Source: Obrimoposthia wandeli
Taxonomy: Eukaryota
Assembly (NCBI GenBank): GCA_977020255.1
Contig: CDROCS010000998.1
Coordinates: 186,001 to 250,000 of the forward strand
DNA length: 64,000 bases
Direction: 5' to 3'
The notes under the pieces were generated by a model. The model saw nothing but the letters and a program-made list of their open reading frames with translations, was not told where the DNA came from and ran no database searches. Within the stretch, counting starts at the first letter, position 1; every line of letters starts with the position of its first letter. Shown here one piece after another: positions 1 to 7,838 of the stretch. The position numbers and the translations under genes are program-made.

Positions 1-1380
1 GTTTTCAAAGCGTTTTTGATAGCCTCTATCTTTTGGGGTGCAACGGCAATGACAATTGGAGTCATACTCGCATCACAATTGTATTGGGTTGATTTAAATT
101 TTGCCTCTGAATTCTTTAACTTTGGTCGGCTTCGCCCTTTACATACAAATGGAGTCGTCTTCGGTTTAGTGTGTAACATCTTAATGGGGGTATCACTGTA
201 TGTTGTATGTCGAACTTCTGAAACAACGTTAATTTCTGAGAAGCTTGCATGGGTATTATTCTGGGGGTGGCAAGGGCTTCTGGTGCTAGGCTACATCACG
301 TTACCACTGGGTTTTACCTCAACCAAAGAATATGCCGAGTTTGAGTGGCCATTAGATATTTTAATGGCGGCACTATGGCTGCTATTTGCATATATTTTCT
401 TTGGCACTCTCTTCACTAAAAAAACAAAACACATCTTCGTGTCTAATTGGTTTACTGGCGCAGTCATTATTGTGATCACCATGATCTTCGTAGTGAATAA
501 CTTATCAATACCAGTAACATTAACTAAATCCTATTCTGTTTTTTCTGGTGCCAGTGATGCGTTAGTGCAGTGGTGGTGGGGGCACAATGCCGTTGGATTC
601 CTTCTAACAGCGTCCTTTATCGGCACTAACTATTACATCATTCCCAAGCTGGTTGATCGTCCCATCTATTCTTATCGTCTGTCTATGATCAACTTCTGGG
701 GGCTTATCGGCTTTTATACCTGGGCAGGTACACATCATTTATTGTATTCCTCATTACCCGACTGGATTCAAAATATCGGCGTAGTGATGTCGTTGTTACT
801 TTGGTTGCCATCATGGGCTGGTGCATATAACGCTTACATGACCATTTATTCCAACAAACAAAAGCTACGTGAAAATTACATTGTGTGGTTCTTCATGTCG
901 TCGATCATTTATTACGCCTTAGCGACAGCTGAAGGACCTTTGATGGCAATTCGTTGGTTTAATGTAATTGCACATAATACTAGTTGGGTTATAGGTCACG
1001 TCCATTCTGGCGCATTAGGCTGGGTCGGTATGACTTGTATCGGTACTTTCTACTATCTAGTACCGAAGCTATTTGGTAATCGAGAACTGTGGTCAATGAA
1101 ACTGGTAAAAACTCACTTCTTCCTTGCTCATGCTGGTATTACCTTTTATATCGTGGCGCTGTGGATTGCTGGTATTGGTCAGGGTGTAATGTGGATGGCA
1201 CAAACCGACAGTGGCGCATTAACATACAGCTTTGTCGATACATTAAACTTCATCTCTCCCTACATGTTCTTACGTTTTGTTGGCGGAGCATTATACCTCT
1301 CAGGGATCGTCTTAATGGTGTACAACCTATGGATGACGGTGCGAGTTCAACCTGTTCGAACCGCAGCATCGGAGGCCTAA
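1..1380 (+). CDS. ccoN: cbb3-type cytochrome c oxidase subunit I (5'-truncated by window edge)
   Basis: Frame open from base 1. Motifs RLRPLHTN, WWWGHNAVGFLLT, YTWAGTHHL and GHVHSGALGW carry the heme b/b3/CuB histidines. Confidence 0.97.
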   Translation, partial: VFKAFLIASIFWGATAMTIGVILASQLYWVDLNFASEFFNFGRLRPLHTNGVVFGLVCNILMGVSLYVVCRTSETTLISEKLAWVLFWGWQGLLVLGYITLPLGFTSTKEYAEFEWPLDILMAALWLLFAYIFFGTLFTKKTKHIFVSNWFTGAVIIVITMIFVVNNLSIPVTLTKSYSVFSGASDALVQWWWGHNAVGFLLTASFIGTNYYIIPKLVDRPIYSYRLSMINFWGLIGFYTWAGTHHLLYSSLPDWIQNIGVVMSLLLWLPSWAGAYNAYMTIYSNKQKLRENYIVWFFMSSIIYYALATAEGPLMAIRWFNVIAHNTSWVIGHVHSGALGWVGMTCIGTFYYLVPKLFGNRELWSMKLVKTHFFLAHAGITFYIVALWIAGIGQGVMWMAQTDSGALTYSFVDTLNFISPYMFLRFVGGALYLSGIVLMVYNLWMTVRVQPVRTAASEA

Positions 1381-1383
1381 ATC

Positions 1384-2001
1384 ATGAAGATTAATATTAC
1401 CAAATCTGTCGTGTCATTTATTGTTGTAACATTTCTAGTCGCGTCTTTTTCATTCTTAGTTTGGGTACTTCCGGGCTTTTTCATTCGTGATGATTTAGCA
1501 ATGAAAACCATGGCAAAACCATTAAAGCCGCTGGAATTAGTAGGCCGAGATGTGTATATGGCACAAGGGTGCCATGTGTGCCATACCCAGATGGTAAGAG
1601 ACCTCGAACCTGAACGTGTTCGCTACGGTCGTTCTAATCAAATGGAAGATGATATCTACGAATTCACTTTTTTATGGGGATCCGCACGGATCGGACCTGA
1701 TCTCACTAACATTGGTTTGAAATACACGAATGAATGGCATACCGAACATTTAATTAGCCCACAATCTTTGGTACCAGAATCTATCATGCCACAGTATCCG
1801 TGGTTATTTGAACAGCCTGTAAATAATGCTGATATCGGAAAAAAAATGACGGTGCTACAAACATTAGGTGTGCCGTATTCAGCAGCCGATATAGCGGGAG
1901 CATCAGATATTGTTAAAGGGAAAACCAAAGGCGAAGCCTTAGTGGCTTATTTAATGAGCCTTGGAGTAGATACACATAACAGTATGGGAGATCTACAATG
2001 A
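1384..2001 (+). CDS. ccoO: cbb3-type cytochrome c oxidase subunit II (monoheme c)
   Basis: GRDVY..GCHVCHTQMVR, WGSARIGPDL, SIMPQYPWL; directly after ccoN. Confidence 0.96.
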   Translation: MKINITKSVVSFIVVTFLVASFSFLVWVLPGFFIRDDLAMKTMAKPLKPLELVGRDVYMAQGCHVCHTQMVRDLEPERVRYGRSNQMEDDIYEFTFLWGSARIGPDLTNIGLKYTNEWHTEHLISPQSLVPESIMPQYPWLFEQPVNNADIGKKMTVLQTLGVPYSAADIAGASDIVKGKTKGEALVAYLMSLGVDTHNSMGDLQ

Positions 2002-3473
2002 GTGAATTTTCTGATACTTGGTCCAGTACGCTTACCGTCATCTTCCTGCTTGTCATGCTTGGCGTTGTTCTTTACTTGTTTACTACAAATAAGTTTGCTC
2101 AAACCGACAAATGCTTGTCAACATTTGACGGTATTGATGAGAACGATGCTCCTATTCCTAAAATTGTGTTTTGGGGCTATTTAATCTTCTTTATTGGTGC
2201 CGTGGTATACCTCCTATTGTTTCCTGGTATCGCATCATGGCAAGGCCTTTTGAAATGGAGTGGTAAAAGCGATGCGTATAATGCCCACAGCATTAATCTT
2301 GATACCCGTATAGATAACACTCTGATTAATAACCCTAATGCTAATTTGGCTTTATTAGCGAAAGATGCCGTGATTGTAGATGCTGGTAAATCGTTATTTA
2401 AGGATAACTGCGCAGCGTGCCATGCTATTTCAGGGCAAGGGCAATCAACATTTCCCAACCTTACGGACAGTGAATGGCTTTATGGTGGTAGTGATCAAAA
2501 TATCTACGAAAGTGTTCAGCATGGAAGGCATGGAGTGATGCCTGCGTGGGATGAGCATTTAACACCAGCGGAAATTGATAACGTCACTGACTATGTAATG
2601 AATATCAACAATGCTTCAGCATCCAATGCCATCTTCGAGAAAAACTGTGCAGGTTGCCATGGTAAAAACGCAAAAGGTAACCCCGCCATTGGCGCGCCAA
2701 ATTTAACCGATGATGTGTGGTTACATGGCCGTTCAAAAGAAGCAATCCACAAAAGTATCGCTCATGGATTAAATAATCAGATGCCAGCATTTGGTGGACG
2801 TTTTTCACAAAACCAATTGTTATCAGTCGCCACCTATGTACTGAGCCTTAATCCAGAACATGAAGCCACTTCTGCCAGCTCACAACAGATGTTGTTAAGC
2901 CAATTACTACATCCAGAAACAGCTGGTGCAGGAATGATTCCCGTTACAGTCAAAACCTGTATCGGCTGCCATGGAACAAATGGCGAAGGGCTCGGCAGTA
3001 CTGCACCAAAATTGGCTGGATTGTCATCAGAATATCTGCTGGCTCAGCTTTATAACTTTAAAAATGGCAATCGTAACAATGTCACGATGATATCTATGGC
3101 TGCACCACTAGATGACAAAGCCATGGAAAAAGCAGCCGAGTATTTTGGTCAGCAGACACCGAAAGTATTATCAAAAACAGTATTACGAGGCGATCAAGTG
3201 ATTTATGACGATCTTGCCGCCAAGTTAGTAAACCAAGGGGATTGGTCAAGAGAGTTGCCTTCGTGTGTCACATGCCATGCAACAGCTACCTTGGGTGTCG
3301 ATAATTTTCCACGTCTTGCACAGCAAGATGCTTCTTATTTAGAAAAGCAGTTACTTGACTGGCAACAAGGGATACGTAAAGGGGATCATGACAACATGAT
3401 GGGCAATATTGCCAAGAAATTGACCGATGTTGAGATAAAAGCTATCGCTCAATATCTCGCTAACATGCAGTAA
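1998..3473 (+). CDS. ccoP: cbb3 oxidase subunit III (CcoP) fused to a C-terminal diheme cytochrome c4/TsdB-like module (4 CxxCH)
   Basis: CcoP N-terminus (GIDENDAPIP + TM) with hemes CAACH and CAGCH, then two more c4-type hemes CIGCH and CVTCH (PKLAG..YL..QL, GDWSR, PRLAQQ..Y..KQL). ATGA overlap with ccoO. Confidence 0.9.
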   Translation: MSEFSDTWSSTLTVIFLLVMLGVVLYLFTTNKFAQTDKCLSTFDGIDENDAPIPKIVFWGYLIFFIGAVVYLLLFPGIASWQGLLKWSGKSDAYNAHSINLDTRIDNTLINNPNANLALLAKDAVIVDAGKSLFKDNCAACHAISGQGQSTFPNLTDSEWLYGGSDQNIYESVQHGRHGVMPAWDEHLTPAEIDNVTDYVMNINNASASNAIFEKNCAGCHGKNAKGNPAIGAPNLTDDVWLHGRSKEAIHKSIAHGLNNQMPAFGGRFSQNQLLSVATYVLSLNPEHEATSASSQQMLLSQLLHPETAGAGMIPVTVKTCIGCHGTNGEGLGSTAPKLAGLSSEYLLAQLYNFKNGNRNNVTMISMAAPLDDKAMEKAAEYFGQQTPKVLSKTVLRGDQVIYDDLAAKLVNQGDWSRELPSCVTCHATATLGVDNFPRLAQQDASYLEKQLLDWQQGIRKGDHDNMMGNIAKKLTDVEIKAIAQYLANMQ

Positions 3474-3483
3474 GGAGGCTGAC

Positions 3484-4614
3484 ATGAAACTATTTCGTTA
3501 TTTATCATTTAGCTCTACATCATTCATTTCTGTACGACTGTTTTGCTCAACCTTTTTTTGTTCACAATTGCTTTATTCACAATTGCTTATACTAACACCG
3601 TTACTGTTTTCAATCAGTGTTGTTGCTGAAACGCAATTAGACATGCAACATGAAATTCCGGCTGAACACAAAGACACCGAAGCGAACAAAATGGTGCCAT
3701 ACGCGTTGTCGACAATTCCAAATTCAGAATTCGGCGATAAAGTTAAACTCGGCTATCAACTCGTTACTGACTCTCAGAAAATGAGAGGGAAATATGTATT
3801 TGATAACCAAAACTGTACTAACTGTCACTTAGCATCAGGTAGAAAACCCAATGCTGCACCTTTAGGGGCCGCTTTTTTCGCATACCCTGCTTTTCGTTCA
3901 AAGAACAACAAAGTGAATTCGTATCAGGAACGGATACAAGGGTGCTTTAAGTATTCAATGAATGGGCTAGTTCCACCCAAAGGCAGTGACGAGCTAATCG
4001 CAATTGCCGCCTATTCCTATTGGGTAGGGGTCACCTCAATGTATAATTTCTATGATGTAGAAGCTGATGTACCAGAGCTCTCAGATGCCGCCTTACTGCA
4101 AGGTGGTAACCTGGATGACTTTGTCTTGAATGCTGCGATTAATGGTAAAATGACCATAAAAGAGCGTTCAAAATTACCCGGGCGAGGCTACCCTAAATTA
4201 GCCAAACCGGACATGAAGCCTGATTACGTTCGCGGTAAAACGGTTTACACTAATCACTGTGCTGCTTGCCATAAAGAAGATGGGCAAGGAAGATCTGTGA
4301 AAGGTATTTCATCGTTGCCACCATTGTGGGGTCCGAACAGCTATAACTTAGGTGCAGGTATGCACCGCACAAACACTGCTGCATTTTACATCTATGAAAA
4401 CATGCCTCTTGGCAAAAGTATTCAGCTTTCAAAACAGGAAGCGTGGGATGTTGCGTTATACATGAACTCTCAACAACGACCCCAAGATCCACGTTTTGAA
4501 GGTAATGTAGTTGATACCGATGATATTTATCATAAGCATGACTGTGTGTATGGTGAAAAGGTCAATGGTTCAATACTTGGCAAAGATGCATACCCCAATC
4601 ACCCTGAAGGTTAA
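3484..4614 (+). CDS. tsdA: thiosulfate dehydrogenase/tetrathionate reductase TsdA-family diheme cytochrome c
   Basis: CTNCH and CAACH; RIQGCFKYSMNG (Cys heme-ligand motif); PPLWG.NSYNLGAGM; long hydrophobic N-terminus. Confidence 0.85.
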   Translation: MKLFRYLSFSSTSFISVRLFCSTFFCSQLLYSQLLILTPLLFSISVVAETQLDMQHEIPAEHKDTEANKMVPYALSTIPNSEFGDKVKLGYQLVTDSQKMRGKYVFDNQNCTNCHLASGRKPNAAPLGAAFFAYPAFRSKNNKVNSYQERIQGCFKYSMNGLVPPKGSDELIAIAAYSYWVGVTSMYNFYDVEADVPELSDAALLQGGNLDDFVLNAAINGKMTIKERSKLPGRGYPKLAKPDMKPDYVRGKTVYTNHCAACHKEDGQGRSVKGISSLPPLWGPNSYNLGAGMHRTNTAAFYIYENMPLGKSIQLSKQEAWDVALYMNSQQRPQDPRFEGNVVDTDDIYHKHDCVYGEKVNGSILGKDAYPNHPEG

Positions 4615-4643: not shown

Positions 4644-5039
4644 CTATTGACTTTCTTTGGTCATTAGCTTCATTCCAAAATCAAGTTGTTCGCGCCAGAT
4701 TGTATGCAAGTCATCATTGTACTGAGGGTCGTGTTCTTTGACGGCTTGCATTAAACAATCAAACCAGACATTAAATAAATGAGGAGCAATATTCATTTTT
4801 TTATGGCGTAGGGCAATTCTTTTGATTAACTGTTCTTGGGTAAAGGGATCTTGAGTGGGCTGGATCATCGCAAGAGAGGCTTTTAGTGTGAGCATTTGCT
4901 GTTTTTTATCCGTACTCCCAAACATATCTCTAACAGTTACATCTGCATTTATAAATAACGAATAGAATAAAGGTAAAAAATCATCATTGCCCATGCAACG
5001 CTGATAGCTAGCTTGGTAAAGGTTATATTTTTCCATCAA
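4644..5039 (-). CDS. single-domain globin
   Basis: 131 aa; SYQRC..F...FY..F...V..MF and H(F8)-like RIALRHKKMNIAPHLF..W..CL pattern. Confidence 0.75.
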   Translation of the reverse strand: MMEKYNLYQASYQRCMGNDDFLPLFYSLFINADVTVRDMFGSTDKKQQMLTLKASLAMIQPTQDPFTQEQLIKRIALRHKKMNIAPHLFNVWFDCLMQAVKEHDPQYNDDLHTIWREQLDFGMKLMTKESQ

Positions 5040-6385: not shown

Positions 6386-6569
6386 TACCTGATTTTATGG
6401 ATTGAACTATAAAATCAGTGTAGCCAACATTTCGCAGCATTTAACAATAAAGGCACTCGTCACAAGCATCACGGTTATTTTCCACCAGCAAGATCAATGA
6501 AAGTGCCAGTTACATAAGATGAAGAATCGGATAGCAACCACTCAATAGCTTGAGCAACTTCTAACGCCG

Positions 6570-7256
6570 TTGCCGCACCAATACCACGCCCAGCACCAGT
6601 CACTAATACGGTTCTCTGAGTATCTAATGTTTTTTTCATCTATTATTTATTCCTTACAAAGCCGCTTAACTTTAACCATTACAAAACAATTAATACAACA
6701 AGTTACGATATTGCGCTATTTTTTGATAACATGCTCGGCATTATACAAGGAAGTGATAAACGCATTGGAAGCTAGCCGTAGAAATTTTAGTGAGAATAGT
6801 AGTAGGGTAAGTGCGCTTATCATATTGTCGATCGTGCTAAACGGCTTTCTATCATCCATTGTTGTGCTTAACCCAACCGCATTCTCTGGTAATAGTAATT
6901 GGTTAACGGCACCGCTGACTGAAAAGGTATTAATCTGTACAGCAGAAGGTCTGCGATGGATAGACCCAAGTATGTTACTGCAAAAGAATGCTCGACAACC
7001 AGCATTAGCCAGTGAAAAATCATCGCTCAATCACAATCAATACCAACACTACCAATTTCACTGCCCACTCTTAAAGCACCACCAGCCCGCAGAATTATTA
7101 GCGTATTTGAGTATATTCATCCTATTCGCAATGTTGGTTGTGGCGACGCTTCAGAGGCTCTCGCTTTGCCTCTTTTTCTGCTATGAAAAAATGTACCTTA
7201 CTTATGCCCCTAAACAGTCTCCGCCTTCTTCATTATCGCCACAAAAAATAAACTAA
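6570..7256 (+). CDS. DUF2946-like membrane protein (possible Cu-binding); true start uncertain, probably downstream
   Basis: TM, ICTAEG, His-rich HCP segment, C-terminal P.QSPP; lies just upstream of a PCu(A)C gene, the usual DUF2946 context. Confidence 0.55.
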   Translation: MPHQYHAQHQSLIRFSEYLMFFSSIIYSLQSRLTLTITKQLIQQVTILRYFLITCSALYKEVINALEASRRNFSENSSRVSALIILSIVLNGFLSSIVVLNPTAFSGNSNWLTAPLTEKVLICTAEGLRWIDPSMLLQKNARQPALASEKSSLNHNQYQHYQFHCPLLKHHQPAELLAYLSIFILFAMLVVATLQRLSLCLFFCYEKMYLTYAPKQSPPSSLSPQKIN

Positions 7257-7343
7257 AAAAATCAGCTAACAATTAGAAGAATATACCCACCCATGCACAA
7301 TGCAGCTTTAAAACAAACAACGAGGTGGAACATGGAGAAAGTT

Positions 7344-7838
7344 ATGAAAAAAAATACATTCATCACCCTGCTATTTAGTAGCGCACTATTTCTATCAAGC
7401 TTTGCAAATGCGCACGATTACAAAGCGGGCGACTTGCAAATTGACCACCCTTGGTCAAAAGCAGTACCCCCCAATTCATCGGTTGCTGCAGCCTTTTTCA
7501 ATGTCACGAATCATGGCAGCGAAAATGATGTATTGATCAGTGCTGAATCTCCGATTGCAGGTAAAGTAGAATTACATGCTCATATTCATGAAGACGGCAT
7601 GATGAAAATGCGTGAAGTTAAAGATATTAAAATCCCAGCAAATGATAGTACTTCACTAAAACCGGGGGCCAATCACATCATGTTTTTCAACCTTACTAAG
7701 GTGCCAAAACTAGGCGATCGCTTTCCACTGACACTGCACTTTAAAAACGCAGGGGAAATGACTATTGAAATTGCAGTTGAAAAAGCAACATATCAGATGG
7801 AAATGAAACCTGAAAAGACAAAAGAGCAGCACCATTAA
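7344..7838 (+). CDS. periplasmic copper chaperone PCu(A)C
   Basis: Signal peptide; H..GDL.I.HPWS; ELHAH..EDGMMKM and PGANHIM Cu motif. Start chosen from GGAG at 7334-7337 (track start 7293). Confidence 0.93.
   Translation: MKKNTFITLLFSSALFLSSFANAHDYKAGDLQIDHPWSKAVPPNSSVAAAFFNVTNHGSENDVLISAESPIAGKVELHAHIHEDGMMKMREVKDIKIPANDSTSLKPGANHIMFFNLTKVPKLGDRFPLTLHFKNAGEMTIEIAVEKATYQMEMKPEKTKEQHH

What the first reader, a model, noticed from the sequence alone, without database searches (positions are those of the whole stretch)
1..4614. cbb3 oxidase operon hard-wired to a thiosulfate dehydrogenase (ccoN-ccoO-ccoP::c4-tsdA)
Seen: four tightly coupled genes (gaps of 3, -4 and 10 nt), no ccoQ, and a TsdA-motif gene as the last member. 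Known: TsdA oxidises thiosulfate to tetrathionate and passes electrons via TsdB/c4 to terminal oxidases. Inference: a self-contained thiosulfate-to-O2 chain giving lithoheterotrophic energy under low O2 to an organism from a normally heterotrophic lineage, probably as a second cbb3 isoform.
Basis: partly seen in the sequence, partly recalled or inferred. Interest (0 to 1): 0.8.

Follow-up and report, generated by a model that had tools for sequence, protein, structure and literature searches.

The report
Oxidase fused to its thiosulfate-enzyme partner
A Photobacterium contig carries a spare cbb3-type oxygen reductase whose third subunit is fused to TsdB, the usual electron acceptor of thiosulfate dehydrogenase, with the TsdA enzyme gene 10 bases downstream, so thiosulfate oxidation looks wired straight to oxygen reduction in one operon.

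Summary
Four same-strand genes lie 3, -4 and 10 nt apart with no ccoQ: ccoN (starts 18 nt before the window), ccoO, a 491-aa four-haem ccoP, and a dihaem gene.

The last gene is a TsdA. It matches M. purpuratum TsdBA at E 1e-65 and A. vinosum TsdA at 1e-32, and it keeps the active-site Cys and the haem-2 Met.

The extra C-terminal half of CcoP is specifically TsdB-like. Its closest free-standing relatives (45-51% identity) all sit 9-10 nt upstream of a tsdA, and it nests inside TsdB in a tree.

The same operon occurs in several Vibrio genomes and in metagenome contigs. Moritella and Shewanella have the same oxidase followed by sorAB (sulfite dehydrogenase). This scan had already noted that sorAB form on other DNA of the same assembly.

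The CcoN forms a clade apart from housekeeping CcoN, and four relatives also keep a canonical ccoN. The contig is Photobacterium near P. indicum, inside a mixed 1.35-Gb assembly.

Not shown: transcription, enzyme activity, and a housekeeping oxidase in this same cell. Caveats are an unusually long TsdA signal peptide and IS elements just upstream.

I class it as a new variant of a known kind. No paper on the fusion was found.

The parts
1..1380 (+). ccoN, catalytic subunit I of a divergent cbb3 oxidase (465 aa; the ATG lies 18 nt upstream of the window at G000:C998:185983)
   Evidence: Pfam COX1 1.7e-93. TIGR00780 scores 545-554 bits, below the 583 cut-off. It aligns without gaps to P. stutzeri CcoN 3mk7_A at 538 bits. 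His54, His201, Tyr245, His251, His252, His339 and His341 align with the residues I recall as H60, H207, Y251, H257, H258, H345 and H347 of that enzyme.
1384..2001 (+). ccoO, monohaem subunit II (205 aa, CHVCH at residue 63)
   Evidence: Pfam FixO 5e-57. NF011055 scores 224 bits against a cut-off of 218.
1998..2852 (+). ccoP core (residues 1-285): membrane anchor, FixP_N and two haem c sites (CAACH 138, CAGCH 217)
   Evidence: TIGR00782 scores 215 bits (cut-off 180) over residues 42-285. FixP_N scores 33 bits. PDB CcoP chains 8snh_G and 3mk7_C match at about 1e-39.
2853..2948 (+). linker of about 32 residues between the CcoP core and the added domain, standing where a free TsdB has its signal peptide
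   Evidence: The region is variable and gapped in the alignment of six fusion proteins. Sequence shown.
2949..3473 (+). TsdB-like dihaem cytochrome c4 domain fused to CcoP (residues 318-491; CIGCH 321, CVTCH 423; conserved Met-containing motifs TMISM and DNMMGN)
   Evidence: It matches the TsdB half of PDB 5lo9 (residues 18-188) at 1.6e-21 and c4 6q2u at 9.5e-23. The best free-standing homologues (45-51% identity) are all encoded 9-10 nt upstream of a tsdA. It nests within TsdB in a tree.
3474..3483 (+). 10-nt spacer containing the GGAGG ribosome-binding site of tsdA
   Evidence: Free tsdB-tsdA pairs show the same 9-10 nt spacing.
3484..4614 (+). tsdA, dihaem thiosulfate dehydrogenase (376 aa; CTNCH 111 with Cys154 as the candidate sixth ligand of haem 1; CAACH 259 with Met307 for haem 2)
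   Evidence: PDB 5lo9 matches at 1.2e-65 and A. vinosum TsdA 4wq7 at 1.4e-32, with the R-I-Q-G-C-F and N-M-P-L-G motifs aligned.
3484..3627 (+). unusually long predicted signal peptide of TsdA (48 aa, about 30 aa longer than in homologues), containing an imperfect 15-bp tandem duplication at 3561-3590
   Evidence: Alignment and DNA. No signal-peptide predictor was available, so export is inferred from the hydrophobic stretch ending VVA|ET.

Best explanation
This is an accessory cbb3-type cytochrome c oxidase dedicated to thiosulfate. TsdA in the periplasm oxidises two thiosulfate to tetrathionate at its Cys-ligated haem 1 and passes the electrons through its haem 2 to the TsdB-like dihaem domain. 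That domain is part of the membrane-anchored CcoP subunit. From there electrons run through the two CcoP haems and the CcoO haem to haem b and the haem b3-CuB site of CcoN, where O2 is reduced. The path bypasses the quinone pool, the bc1 complex and soluble cytochromes. Energy can therefore be conserved only by the oxidase itself. The four genes are most likely one transcript. Shown here: the identity of each part, the fusion, conservation of the arrangement, and separate ancestry from housekeeping cbb3. Inferred: direction of electron flow, co-transcription, physical docking of TsdA, and the physiological benefit.
For: 1. TsdA identity. PDB 5lo9 matches at E 1.2e-65 and 4wq7 at 1.4e-32, with the active-site Cys and haem-2 Met motifs conserved in all ten relatives examined.
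2. The CcoP extension is TsdB. Its closest free-standing homologues (E 1e-42 to 1e-53, 45-51% identity) are each followed 9-10 nt later by tsdA, while the next tier of c4-like proteins reaches only 31-35%. In a tree the fused domains group together (93/94) inside bona fide TsdB (98/97).
3. Tight coupling. The spacings are 3, -4 and 10 nt, and tsdA has a strong SD.
4. Conservation. The same ccoN-ccoO-ccoP::tsdB-tsdA order is found in Vibrio sp. 10N.286.49.B1/C2, V. inusitatus, Vibrio sp. SS-MA-C1-2 and the Logan contigs carrying P0003. A 43%-identical metagenome fusion (P0249) sits on a 2.3-kb contig that shows only the ccoP::tsdB-tsdA part.
5. Co-inheritance. CcoN, the c4 domain and TsdA each place the window with the two Vibrio operons.
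6. Direction. The sister operons of Moritella and Shewanella replace tsdA with sorAB, a sulfite dehydrogenase that can only donate electrons. TsdB is described as the natural electron acceptor of TsdA, whereas the tetrathionate-reducing C. jejuni enzyme does not reduce TsdB (PMC5146829).
7. An intact oxidase. All metal-ligand residues of CcoN are conserved.
8. Docking test. The c4 domain with TsdA and four haems gave a median ipSAE of 0.40 against 0.00 for the best control. This is weak support only.
Against: There is no expression data; no RNA run holds the locus. No recognisable FNR box or other conserved regulatory site lies upstream, and IS5-like and IS6-like transposase genes abut the 353-bp upstream region, so the native promoter may be disturbed. 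The TsdA signal peptide is atypically long and holds a tandem duplication, so export is not assured. Haem 2 has Asn-Met, as in C. jejuni and M. purpuratum TsdA, not the Lys-Met of the strongly oxidising A. vinosum enzyme, and TsdA enzymes are reversible. The docking score is weak and a like complex (5lo9) is already solved, so that score may reflect memory of the known structure.
Confidence: 0.75

Rival explanations
1. The fused c4 domain is a general tethered entry point for electrons from the bc1 complex. TsdA then uses it in reverse as a tetrathionate reductase, or works in both directions, so the operon gives a branch point between O2 and tetrathionate rather than a thiosulfate-to-O2 chain.
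For: TsdA enzymes are bifunctional, and the haem-2 Asn-Met arrangement is that of the tetrathionate-reducing C. jejuni enzyme. Cytochromes c4 are reported donors to cbb3 oxidases (PMC9237845). The c4 domain matches P. aeruginosa c4 about as well as it matches M. purpuratum TsdB in the PDB.
Against: The domain nests within TsdB proteins, which are acceptors of TsdA. C. jejuni TsdA does not reduce TsdB in vitro. The sister operons carry sorAB, which can only donate electrons. M. purpuratum TsdBA also has Asn-Met at haem 2, and I recall it as a thiosulfate oxidiser.
Confidence: 0.12
2. The operon is a horizontally acquired island flanked by IS elements that is silent or decaying in this strain, for example because TsdA is not exported or the promoter was lost.
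For: Transposase genes lie directly upstream. The signal peptide is 48 aa and holds a duplication. None of 67 Photobacterium species representatives carries a close copy of this tsdA; six have a TsdA at 42-56% identity to the window's (52% over the full length at best), and the three read in detail have a free tsdB-tsdA pair. Vibrio sp. SS-MA-C1-2 has its ccoP split in two.
Against: All four reading frames are intact, every haem site and metal ligand is kept, and the ribosome-binding site is strong. Near-identical sequence turns up in two other environmental samples.
Confidence: 0.08
3. The adjacency has no functional meaning. The oxidase works with ordinary cytochromes, and TsdA passes its electrons elsewhere.
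For: In some organisms TsdA uses acceptors other than TsdB (PMC9237845).
Against: A covalent fusion of TsdB to CcoP, the conserved gene order in several lineages, and congruent trees of three components argue against coincidence.
Confidence: 0.04

Closest known systems
TsdBA of Marichromatium purpuratum (PDB 5lo9), and free tsdB-tsdA pairs of Pseudomonas stutzeri, Thiomonas, Halomonas and Shewanella japonica
   Same: The same two modules occur in the same order: a dihaem c4-type TsdB directly ahead of the dihaem TsdA with its Cys-ligated active haem. The 10-nt tsdB-tsdA spacing of the free pairs is kept.
   Different: Here TsdB is fused to CcoP of a terminal oxidase, not to TsdA, and it is not free. 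TsdA carries an inter-domain insertion of about 45 residues that is shared with marine gammaproteobacterial TsdAs and absent from the A. vinosum and M. purpuratum enzymes.
Canonical ccoNOQP cbb3 oxidase (P. stutzeri 3mk7; Vibrionaceae housekeeping enzyme)
   Same: The three core subunits, all cofactor ligands and the CcoP membrane anchor are the same.
   Different: There is no ccoQ and no adjacent ccoGHIS. CcoN is only about 50% identical, scores below the TIGR00780 cut-off and sits on a long, fully supported separate branch. CcoP has four haems instead of two.
bc1-cbb3 supercomplexes with a tethered cytochrome (P. aeruginosa 8smr/8snh with c4; R. capsulatus 6xkx with an engineered CcoP-cyt cy fusion)
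   Same: A c4-type or cy-type cytochrome is held at CcoP to wire a donor complex to the oxidase (PDB matches).
   Different: In those the donor is the bc1 complex, and the R. capsulatus fusion was engineered. Here the fusion is natural and the donor is a periplasmic sulfur enzyme.
ccoN-ccoO-ccoP::c4-sorAB operons of Moritella dasanensis and Shewanella psychropiezotolerans / UCD-KL12
   Same: The oxidase clade and the fused c4 domain are the same (CcoN 67-70% identical; clade support 100/99).
   Different: The last genes are a SorA-family molybdoenzyme plus a dihaem SorB-like cytochrome instead of tsdA.
ccoN-ccoO-ccoP::trihaem operons of many Vibrio, Photobacterium, Shewanella and Psychromonas species
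   Same: This is the sister clade of ccoQ-less oxidases with an extended CcoP (CcoN 61-64% identical).
   Different: CcoP is 718-732 aa with five haems. Its added part resembles the trihaem cytochrome subunits of membrane dehydrogenases by its three spaced CxxCH sites and my recollection of those subunits; no family search confirmed this (one search gave only weak SoxX and CcoP hits). A small monohaem cytochrome gene precedes ccoN, and no conserved dehydrogenase gene follows.

Membership tests
TsdA thiosulfate dehydrogenase / tetrathionate reductase | Dihaem c-type cytochrome with two CxxCH sites in two class-I-like domains | tested here: met
   CTNCH at 111 and CAACH at 259. Both domains align to 5lo9 and 4wq7.
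TsdA thiosulfate dehydrogenase / tetrathionate reductase | [quoted passage not shown] | tested here: met
   Cys154 in RIQGCFKYSMNG aligns with the Cys of RIGDCFERSLNG in A. vinosum TsdA. The motif is kept in all ten relatives. Its role is described in PMC5146829.
TsdA thiosulfate dehydrogenase / tetrathionate reductase | Strictly conserved Met at haem 2 (A. vinosum Met209, C. jejuni Met255) | tested here: met
   Met307 in NMPLG. The preceding residue is Asn, as in C. jejuni and M. purpuratum.
TsdA thiosulfate dehydrogenase / tetrathionate reductase | Curated family model (Pfam PF21342 SoxA-TsdA_cyt-c) | tested here: inconclusive
   25.1 bits against a gathering score of 27 (E 1.7e-5). The direct match to solved TsdA is far stronger.
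TsdA thiosulfate dehydrogenase / tetrathionate reductase | Export to the periplasm | tested here: inconclusive
   An N-terminal hydrophobic leader is present, but it is 48 aa long and about 30 aa longer than in homologues. No predictor was available.
TsdA thiosulfate dehydrogenase / tetrathionate reductase | Thiosulfate to tetrathionate activity | not testable with these tools
   This needs an enzyme assay.
TsdB (electron acceptor of TsdA) | Dihaem c4-type cytochrome with candidate His/Met ligation of both haems | tested here: met
   CIGCH at 321 and CVTCH at 423, with conserved TM..M and DNMM motifs. It matches c4 structures and the TsdB half of 5lo9.
TsdB (electron acceptor of TsdA) | Encoded immediately upstream of tsdA | tested here: met
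   The coding region ends 10 nt before tsdA, as in the free tsdB-tsdA pairs.
TsdB (electron acceptor of TsdA) | Closer to TsdB proteins than to other c4 cytochromes | tested here: met
   The top four free-standing hits are 45-51% identical. All three whose context was read are TsdB. The next tier reaches 31-35%. The domain is nested in TsdB in the tree.
TsdB (electron acceptor of TsdA) | Free, soluble periplasmic protein with its own signal peptide | tested here: not met
   It is the C-terminal domain of membrane-anchored CcoP, and a linker stands where the signal peptide would be. It is therefore a TsdB-derived domain, not a TsdB protein.
cbb3-type cytochrome c oxidase (CcoNOP) | CcoN with the ligands of haem b, haem b3 and CuB and the cross-linked Tyr | tested here: met
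   Gapless alignment to 3mk7_A with all seven residues conserved. The residue numbering of the P. stutzeri enzyme is from my memory of the published structure.
cbb3-type cytochrome c oxidase (CcoNOP) | Curated equivalog scores for ccoN, ccoO and ccoP | tested here: inconclusive
   ccoP scores 215 against 180 (met). ccoO NF011055 scores 224 against 218 (met), but TIGR00781 scores 179 against 201 (not met). ccoN scores 554 against 583 (not met). This pattern fits a divergent subfamily.
cbb3-type cytochrome c oxidase (CcoNOP) | ccoQ and linked ccoGHIS assembly genes | tested here: not met
   There is no ccoQ, since ccoO and ccoP overlap, and no ccoGHIS lies within 10 kb on either side. ccoQ is not essential in the known enzymes (my knowledge).

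The most novel reading that the evidence does not exclude
The extended CcoP defines a modular family of substrate-dedicated oxidases. A TsdB-derived or trihaem extension of subunit III would act as a built-in docking wire. A periplasmic dehydrogenase (TsdA here, SorAB in Moritella and Shewanella) would then form a stable 'thiosulfate oxidase' or 'sulfite oxidase' supercomplex with cbb3. The result is a complete respiratory chain encoded by one operon that works independently of quinones and bc1. The trees suggest that the TsdA-linked form came first and that tsdA was later exchanged for sorAB.
Probability: 0.35. Interest if true: 0.75.

Novelty: new variant of a known kind. Interest (0 to 1): 0.62.

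Why it matters
How electrons from TsdA reach oxygen in tetrathionate-forming heterotrophs has been a matter of suggestion. PMC9237845, citing Kurth et al. 2016, says only that TsdB could possibly donate directly to cbb3 oxidases. A natural fusion of TsdB to CcoP is evidence of the 'Rosetta stone' type for exactly that link. It also makes the link testable, because cultured strains carry the operon (V. inusitatus NBRC 102082; Moritella dasanensis ArB 0140 for the sulfite version). The finding shows in addition that common marine heterotrophs (Photobacterium, Vibrio, Moritella, Shewanella) have a distinct, uncharacterised clade of cbb3 oxidases with extended CcoP subunits. These may let them harvest energy from thiosulfate or sulfite at oxic-sulfidic interfaces such as sediments and animal guts.

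Tried and rejected
**Regulatory sites.** I looked for FNR-type (TTGAT-N4-ATCAA) and sigma-54 sites upstream of ccoN in the window and six relatives. Nothing was convincing or conserved. Promoter and terminator scans gave no more hits than shuffled sequence.

**Expression.** Two searches of public runs found no RNA library holding the locus. Co-transcription therefore could not be tested. The reads laid were low-depth contigs, and none of the listed pieces bridges the CcoP-TsdB junction.

**Complex prediction.** The c4 domain with TsdA and four haems gave a median ipSAE of 0.40 (runs 0.40, 0.19, 0.81). The best control scored 0.00, the partner pLDDT was at least 85, and the runs agreed in at least 2% of contacts. 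In the tool's calibration the mark was reached by 51 of 78 solved complexes and 2 of 108 mismatched pairs, but passes at 0.60 or below are weak. A like complex (5lo9) is already solved. I count this as weak support only.

**Linking contigs.** I used the IS6-like element as a probe to link this contig to a contig with a housekeeping ccoN. Close copies lie only on C998 and C5920, so no link was obtained.

**A rejected assumption.** I first took the 714-732-aa 'CcoP' proteins of Aliivibrio and Photobacterium, one of them labelled thiosulfate dehydrogenase by JGI, for CcoP-TsdB-TsdA triple fusions. Their sequences show a different trihaem extension.

**Literature.** Seven full-text searches found no report of a CcoP-TsdB fusion or a cco-tsdA operon. 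The key paper by Kurth et al. 2016 (J Biol Chem) is not held and could not be read.
Full report
**What is there.** The window is G000:C998:186001-250000, part of a 294-kb contig in a 1.35-Gb, 6912-contig assembly. That assembly holds more than twenty bacterial ccoN genes, so it is a mixture of organisms, not one genome. Positions 1-4614 carry four + strand genes: ccoN, ccoO (1384-2001), a 491-aa ccoP (1998-3473) and a 376-aa dihaem cytochrome gene (3484-4614). The spacings are 3 nt, a 4-nt overlap and 10 nt. ccoN really begins at an ATG 18 nt before the window. There is no ccoQ. tsdA has a GGAGG ribosome-binding site 5 nt ahead of its ATG. Promoter-like and terminator-like matches inside the block are no more frequent than in shuffled sequence.

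**The oxidase.** Pfam and NCBIfam name the first three products CcoN, CcoO and CcoP. CcoN scores below the ccoN equivalog cut-off (554 against 583 bits). It nevertheless aligns without a gap to P. stutzeri CcoN (3mk7_A, 538 bits). It keeps the residues that I recall as the ligands of haem b, haem b3 and CuB, and the cross-linked tyrosine. CcoP residues 1-285 are an ordinary membrane-anchored dihaem CcoP (TIGR00782 215 bits; PDB CcoP chains at about 1e-39).

**The added domain is TsdB.** Residues 318-491 of CcoP hold two more CxxCH sites. They match cytochrome c4 structures and the TsdB half of the M. purpuratum TsdBA fusion (5lo9 residues 18-188, E 1.6e-21). Searched alone against 5.8 billion proteins, the domain's best free-standing relatives are 45-51% identical (E 1e-42 to 1e-53), and the next tier drops to 31-35%. 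I read the genomic context of three of the top four: Shewanella japonica, Gallaecimonas kandeliae and a gut metagenome. In each, the protein is encoded 9-10 nt upstream of a SoxA/TsdA-type dihaem cytochrome, so each is a TsdB. The window has the same 10-nt spacing between the end of ccoP and tsdA. In a maximum-likelihood tree the fused domains group together (93/94) inside the TsdB proteins (98/97), next to the free TsdB of other Photobacterium species. The simplest history is that a tsdBA pair was joined to ccoNOP and a linker took the place of the TsdB signal peptide.

**The last gene is TsdA.** It matches M. purpuratum TsdBA (E 1.2e-65) and A. vinosum TsdA (1.4e-32) over both haem domains. 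Cys154 in RIQGCF aligns with the haem-1 cysteine ligand. Met307 in NMPLG aligns with the strictly conserved haem-2 methionine. The residue before that Met is Asn, as in the C. jejuni and M. purpuratum enzymes. The Pfam SoxA/TsdA model falls just short of its threshold (25.1 against 27 bits). There are two oddities. An inter-domain insertion of about 45 residues is shared with other marine gammaproteobacterial TsdAs. The leader is 48 residues, about 30 longer than in homologues, and contains an imperfect 15-bp tandem duplication at 3561-3590.

**Conservation.** Full-length CcoP::c4 fusions are rare.
- The word-indexed protein search returned eight clusters.
- The pattern scan of 185,579 species genomes returned four species.
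- In the exhaustive HMMER search of 1.84 billion representatives, the two top hits are the only single-stretch, full-length matches among the 150 listed.

The order ccoN(465)-ccoO(205)-ccoP::c4-tsdA recurs in Vibrio sp. 10N.286.49.B1/C2, V. inusitatus NBRC 102082, Vibrio sp. SS-MA-C1-2 (where ccoP is split in two) and the Logan contigs carrying P0003. A 43%-identical metagenome fusion (P0249) sits on a 2.3-kb contig that shows only ccoP::c4 followed by a tsdA 52% identical to the window's. Moritella dasanensis, a Moritella MAG, Shewanella psychropiezotolerans and Shewanella sp. UCD-KL12 have the same three oxidase genes. There they are followed by a SorA-family molybdoenzyme and a dihaem SorB-like cytochrome. 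The Moritella form is also present in this assembly on contig C1101, where CcoN is 100% identical to that of M. dasanensis. Earlier notes of this scan had flagged that form on other DNA of the assembly.

**A distinct oxidase clade.** In a CcoN tree of 58 sequences, the oxidases with extended CcoP form a fully supported clade (100/100) on a long branch away from canonical CcoN. Within it:
- The c4-fused enzymes are a clade (100/99).
- The SorAB-linked subgroup has support 100/100.
- The TsdA-linked subgroup, which includes the window, has support 85/42.

The three oxidase-linked TsdAs are likewise a clade (95/99). CcoN, the c4 domain and TsdA thus tell the same story of co-inheritance. The sister group is large. 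At least 45 species of Vibrio, Photobacterium, Shewanella and Psychromonas carry ccoN-ccoO-ccoP::trihaem (718-732 aa, five haems). A small monohaem cytochrome gene precedes ccoN, and no conserved partner gene follows.

**Is it a second isoform, and in what organism?** The genomes of the two Vibrio, the Shewanella and the Moritella carriers each also have a canonical ccoN (750-765 bits) besides the fusion-type ccoN (545-552 bits). Among 67 Photobacterium species representatives, six have a TsdA at 42-56% identity to the window's, and the best full-length matches are 52%. The three of these read in detail have a free tsdB-tsdA pair, and none has the fusion. Together with the IS5-like and IS6-like transposase genes directly upstream, this points to horizontal acquisition. 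A canonical ccoNOQP lies on contig C1028 of the assembly. Its CcoN is 93% identical to canonical Photobacterium CcoN, and its GC content (42%) matches the window's. I could not link the two contigs.

**Mechanism and direction.** TsdB is described as the natural electron acceptor of TsdA, and the tetrathionate-reducing C. jejuni enzyme does not reduce TsdB (PMC5146829). c4 cytochromes donate to cbb3 oxidases, and a direct TsdB-to-cbb3 route has been suggested but not shown (PMC9237845). The fusion fits that route. The sorAB sister operons add a second argument, because sulfite dehydrogenase can only feed electrons in, which argues for donor-to-oxidase flow. From memory, the tetrathionate/thiosulfate couple lies near +0.2 V. 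Entry at the cytochrome c level is then the only option, and the oxidase is the only coupling site. The docking prediction gave weak support only (median 0.40 against 0.00 for the best control).

**What remains open.** Transcription, activity, export of this particular TsdA, regulation, and the presence of a housekeeping oxidase in the same cell are all untested. No paper describing the fusion was found in seven searches, and the most relevant paper could not be read.

**Verdict.** This is a real, conserved and rare arrangement. It is a new variant of known parts that supports a previously only suggested electron route, and it points to a wider family of uncharacterised oxidases.

Noticed in passing
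L024-L069 (e.g. L051:5598-10157, Vibrio harveyi chromosome 2); also G000:C2105 (L085:1-3683): A widespread sister family of ccoQ-less cbb3 operons: small monohaem cytochrome c, ccoN (about 469 aa), ccoO (about 203 aa), and CcoP fused to a trihaem cytochrome (718-732 aa, five CxxCH). It occurs in at least 45 Vibrio, Photobacterium, Shewanella and Psychromonas species, and no conserved partner gene follows. Its function is unknown.
   Followed up: partly
G005 (genome of L024, Photobacterium sp. SKA34): A ccoN family search at E<=1e-100 found only the trihaem-type ccoN (626 bits) and no canonical ccoN. In this lineage the extended-CcoP oxidase may be the only cbb3 enzyme.
   Followed up: no
L084:1118-6554 (G000:C1101:120117-125553): A Moritella dasanensis-like contig in the same assembly carries ccoN-ccoO-ccoP::c4-sorA-sorB (96.5-100% identical to M. 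dasanensis). This is the sulfite version of the same design, and earlier notes of this scan had flagged it.
   Followed up: partly
L081:2612-7163 (Vibrio sp. SS-MA-C1-2, CP090981.1): The same cco-tsdA operon, but ccoP is called as two genes (119 aa and 359 aa). This is either a frameshift or a sequencing error.
   Followed up: no
window 3561-3590: An imperfect 15-bp tandem duplication (ttcacaattgcttta / ttcacaattgcttat) lies inside the TsdA leader and gives ...CSQLLYSQLL.... It is part of a roughly 30-residue extension that homologues lack.
   Followed up: partly
window 4644-5039 (-): A 131-aa globin-like protein (Pfam Globin 28 bits) is convergent with tsdA, and its stop codon lies 29 nt from the tsdA stop. 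It is not found next to the operon in the Vibrio relatives.
   Followed up: no
window 7293-7838 (+): A PCu(A)C-type periplasmic copper chaperone (Pfam 4e-39) lies 2.7 kb downstream of the oxidase genes. It might serve CuB insertion, but the adjacency is not conserved in the relatives.
   Followed up: no
window 6475-6639 (-): A 54-aa ORF joins the N-terminal TGxxxGIG motif of a short-chain dehydrogenase directly to a C-terminal SDR-like tail. It looks like the remnant of an internally deleted gene.
   Followed up: no
L012:1746-9629 (G000:C998:177746-185629): Three transposase genes lie in the 8 kb upstream of ccoN: an IS110/IS1111-type, an IS6/IS240-type and an IS5-type. Close copies of the IS6-type element occur only on contigs C998 and C5920.
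   Followed up: partly
P0250 (metagenome contig, no DNA held): A canonical ccoN-ccoO-ccoQ-ccoP-ccoG-ccoH operon has a 516-aa CcoP that also carries extra cytochrome c domains. CcoP extensions are therefore not confined to the ccoQ-less clade.
   Followed up: no
L013/L008 (G000:C506:2240659-2242300): A free tsdB (205 aa) and tsdA (350 aa) pair lies on a 3.8-Mb contig of another bacterium in the same assembly. It is 46% and 55% identical to the window's fused domain and TsdA.
   Followed up: partly
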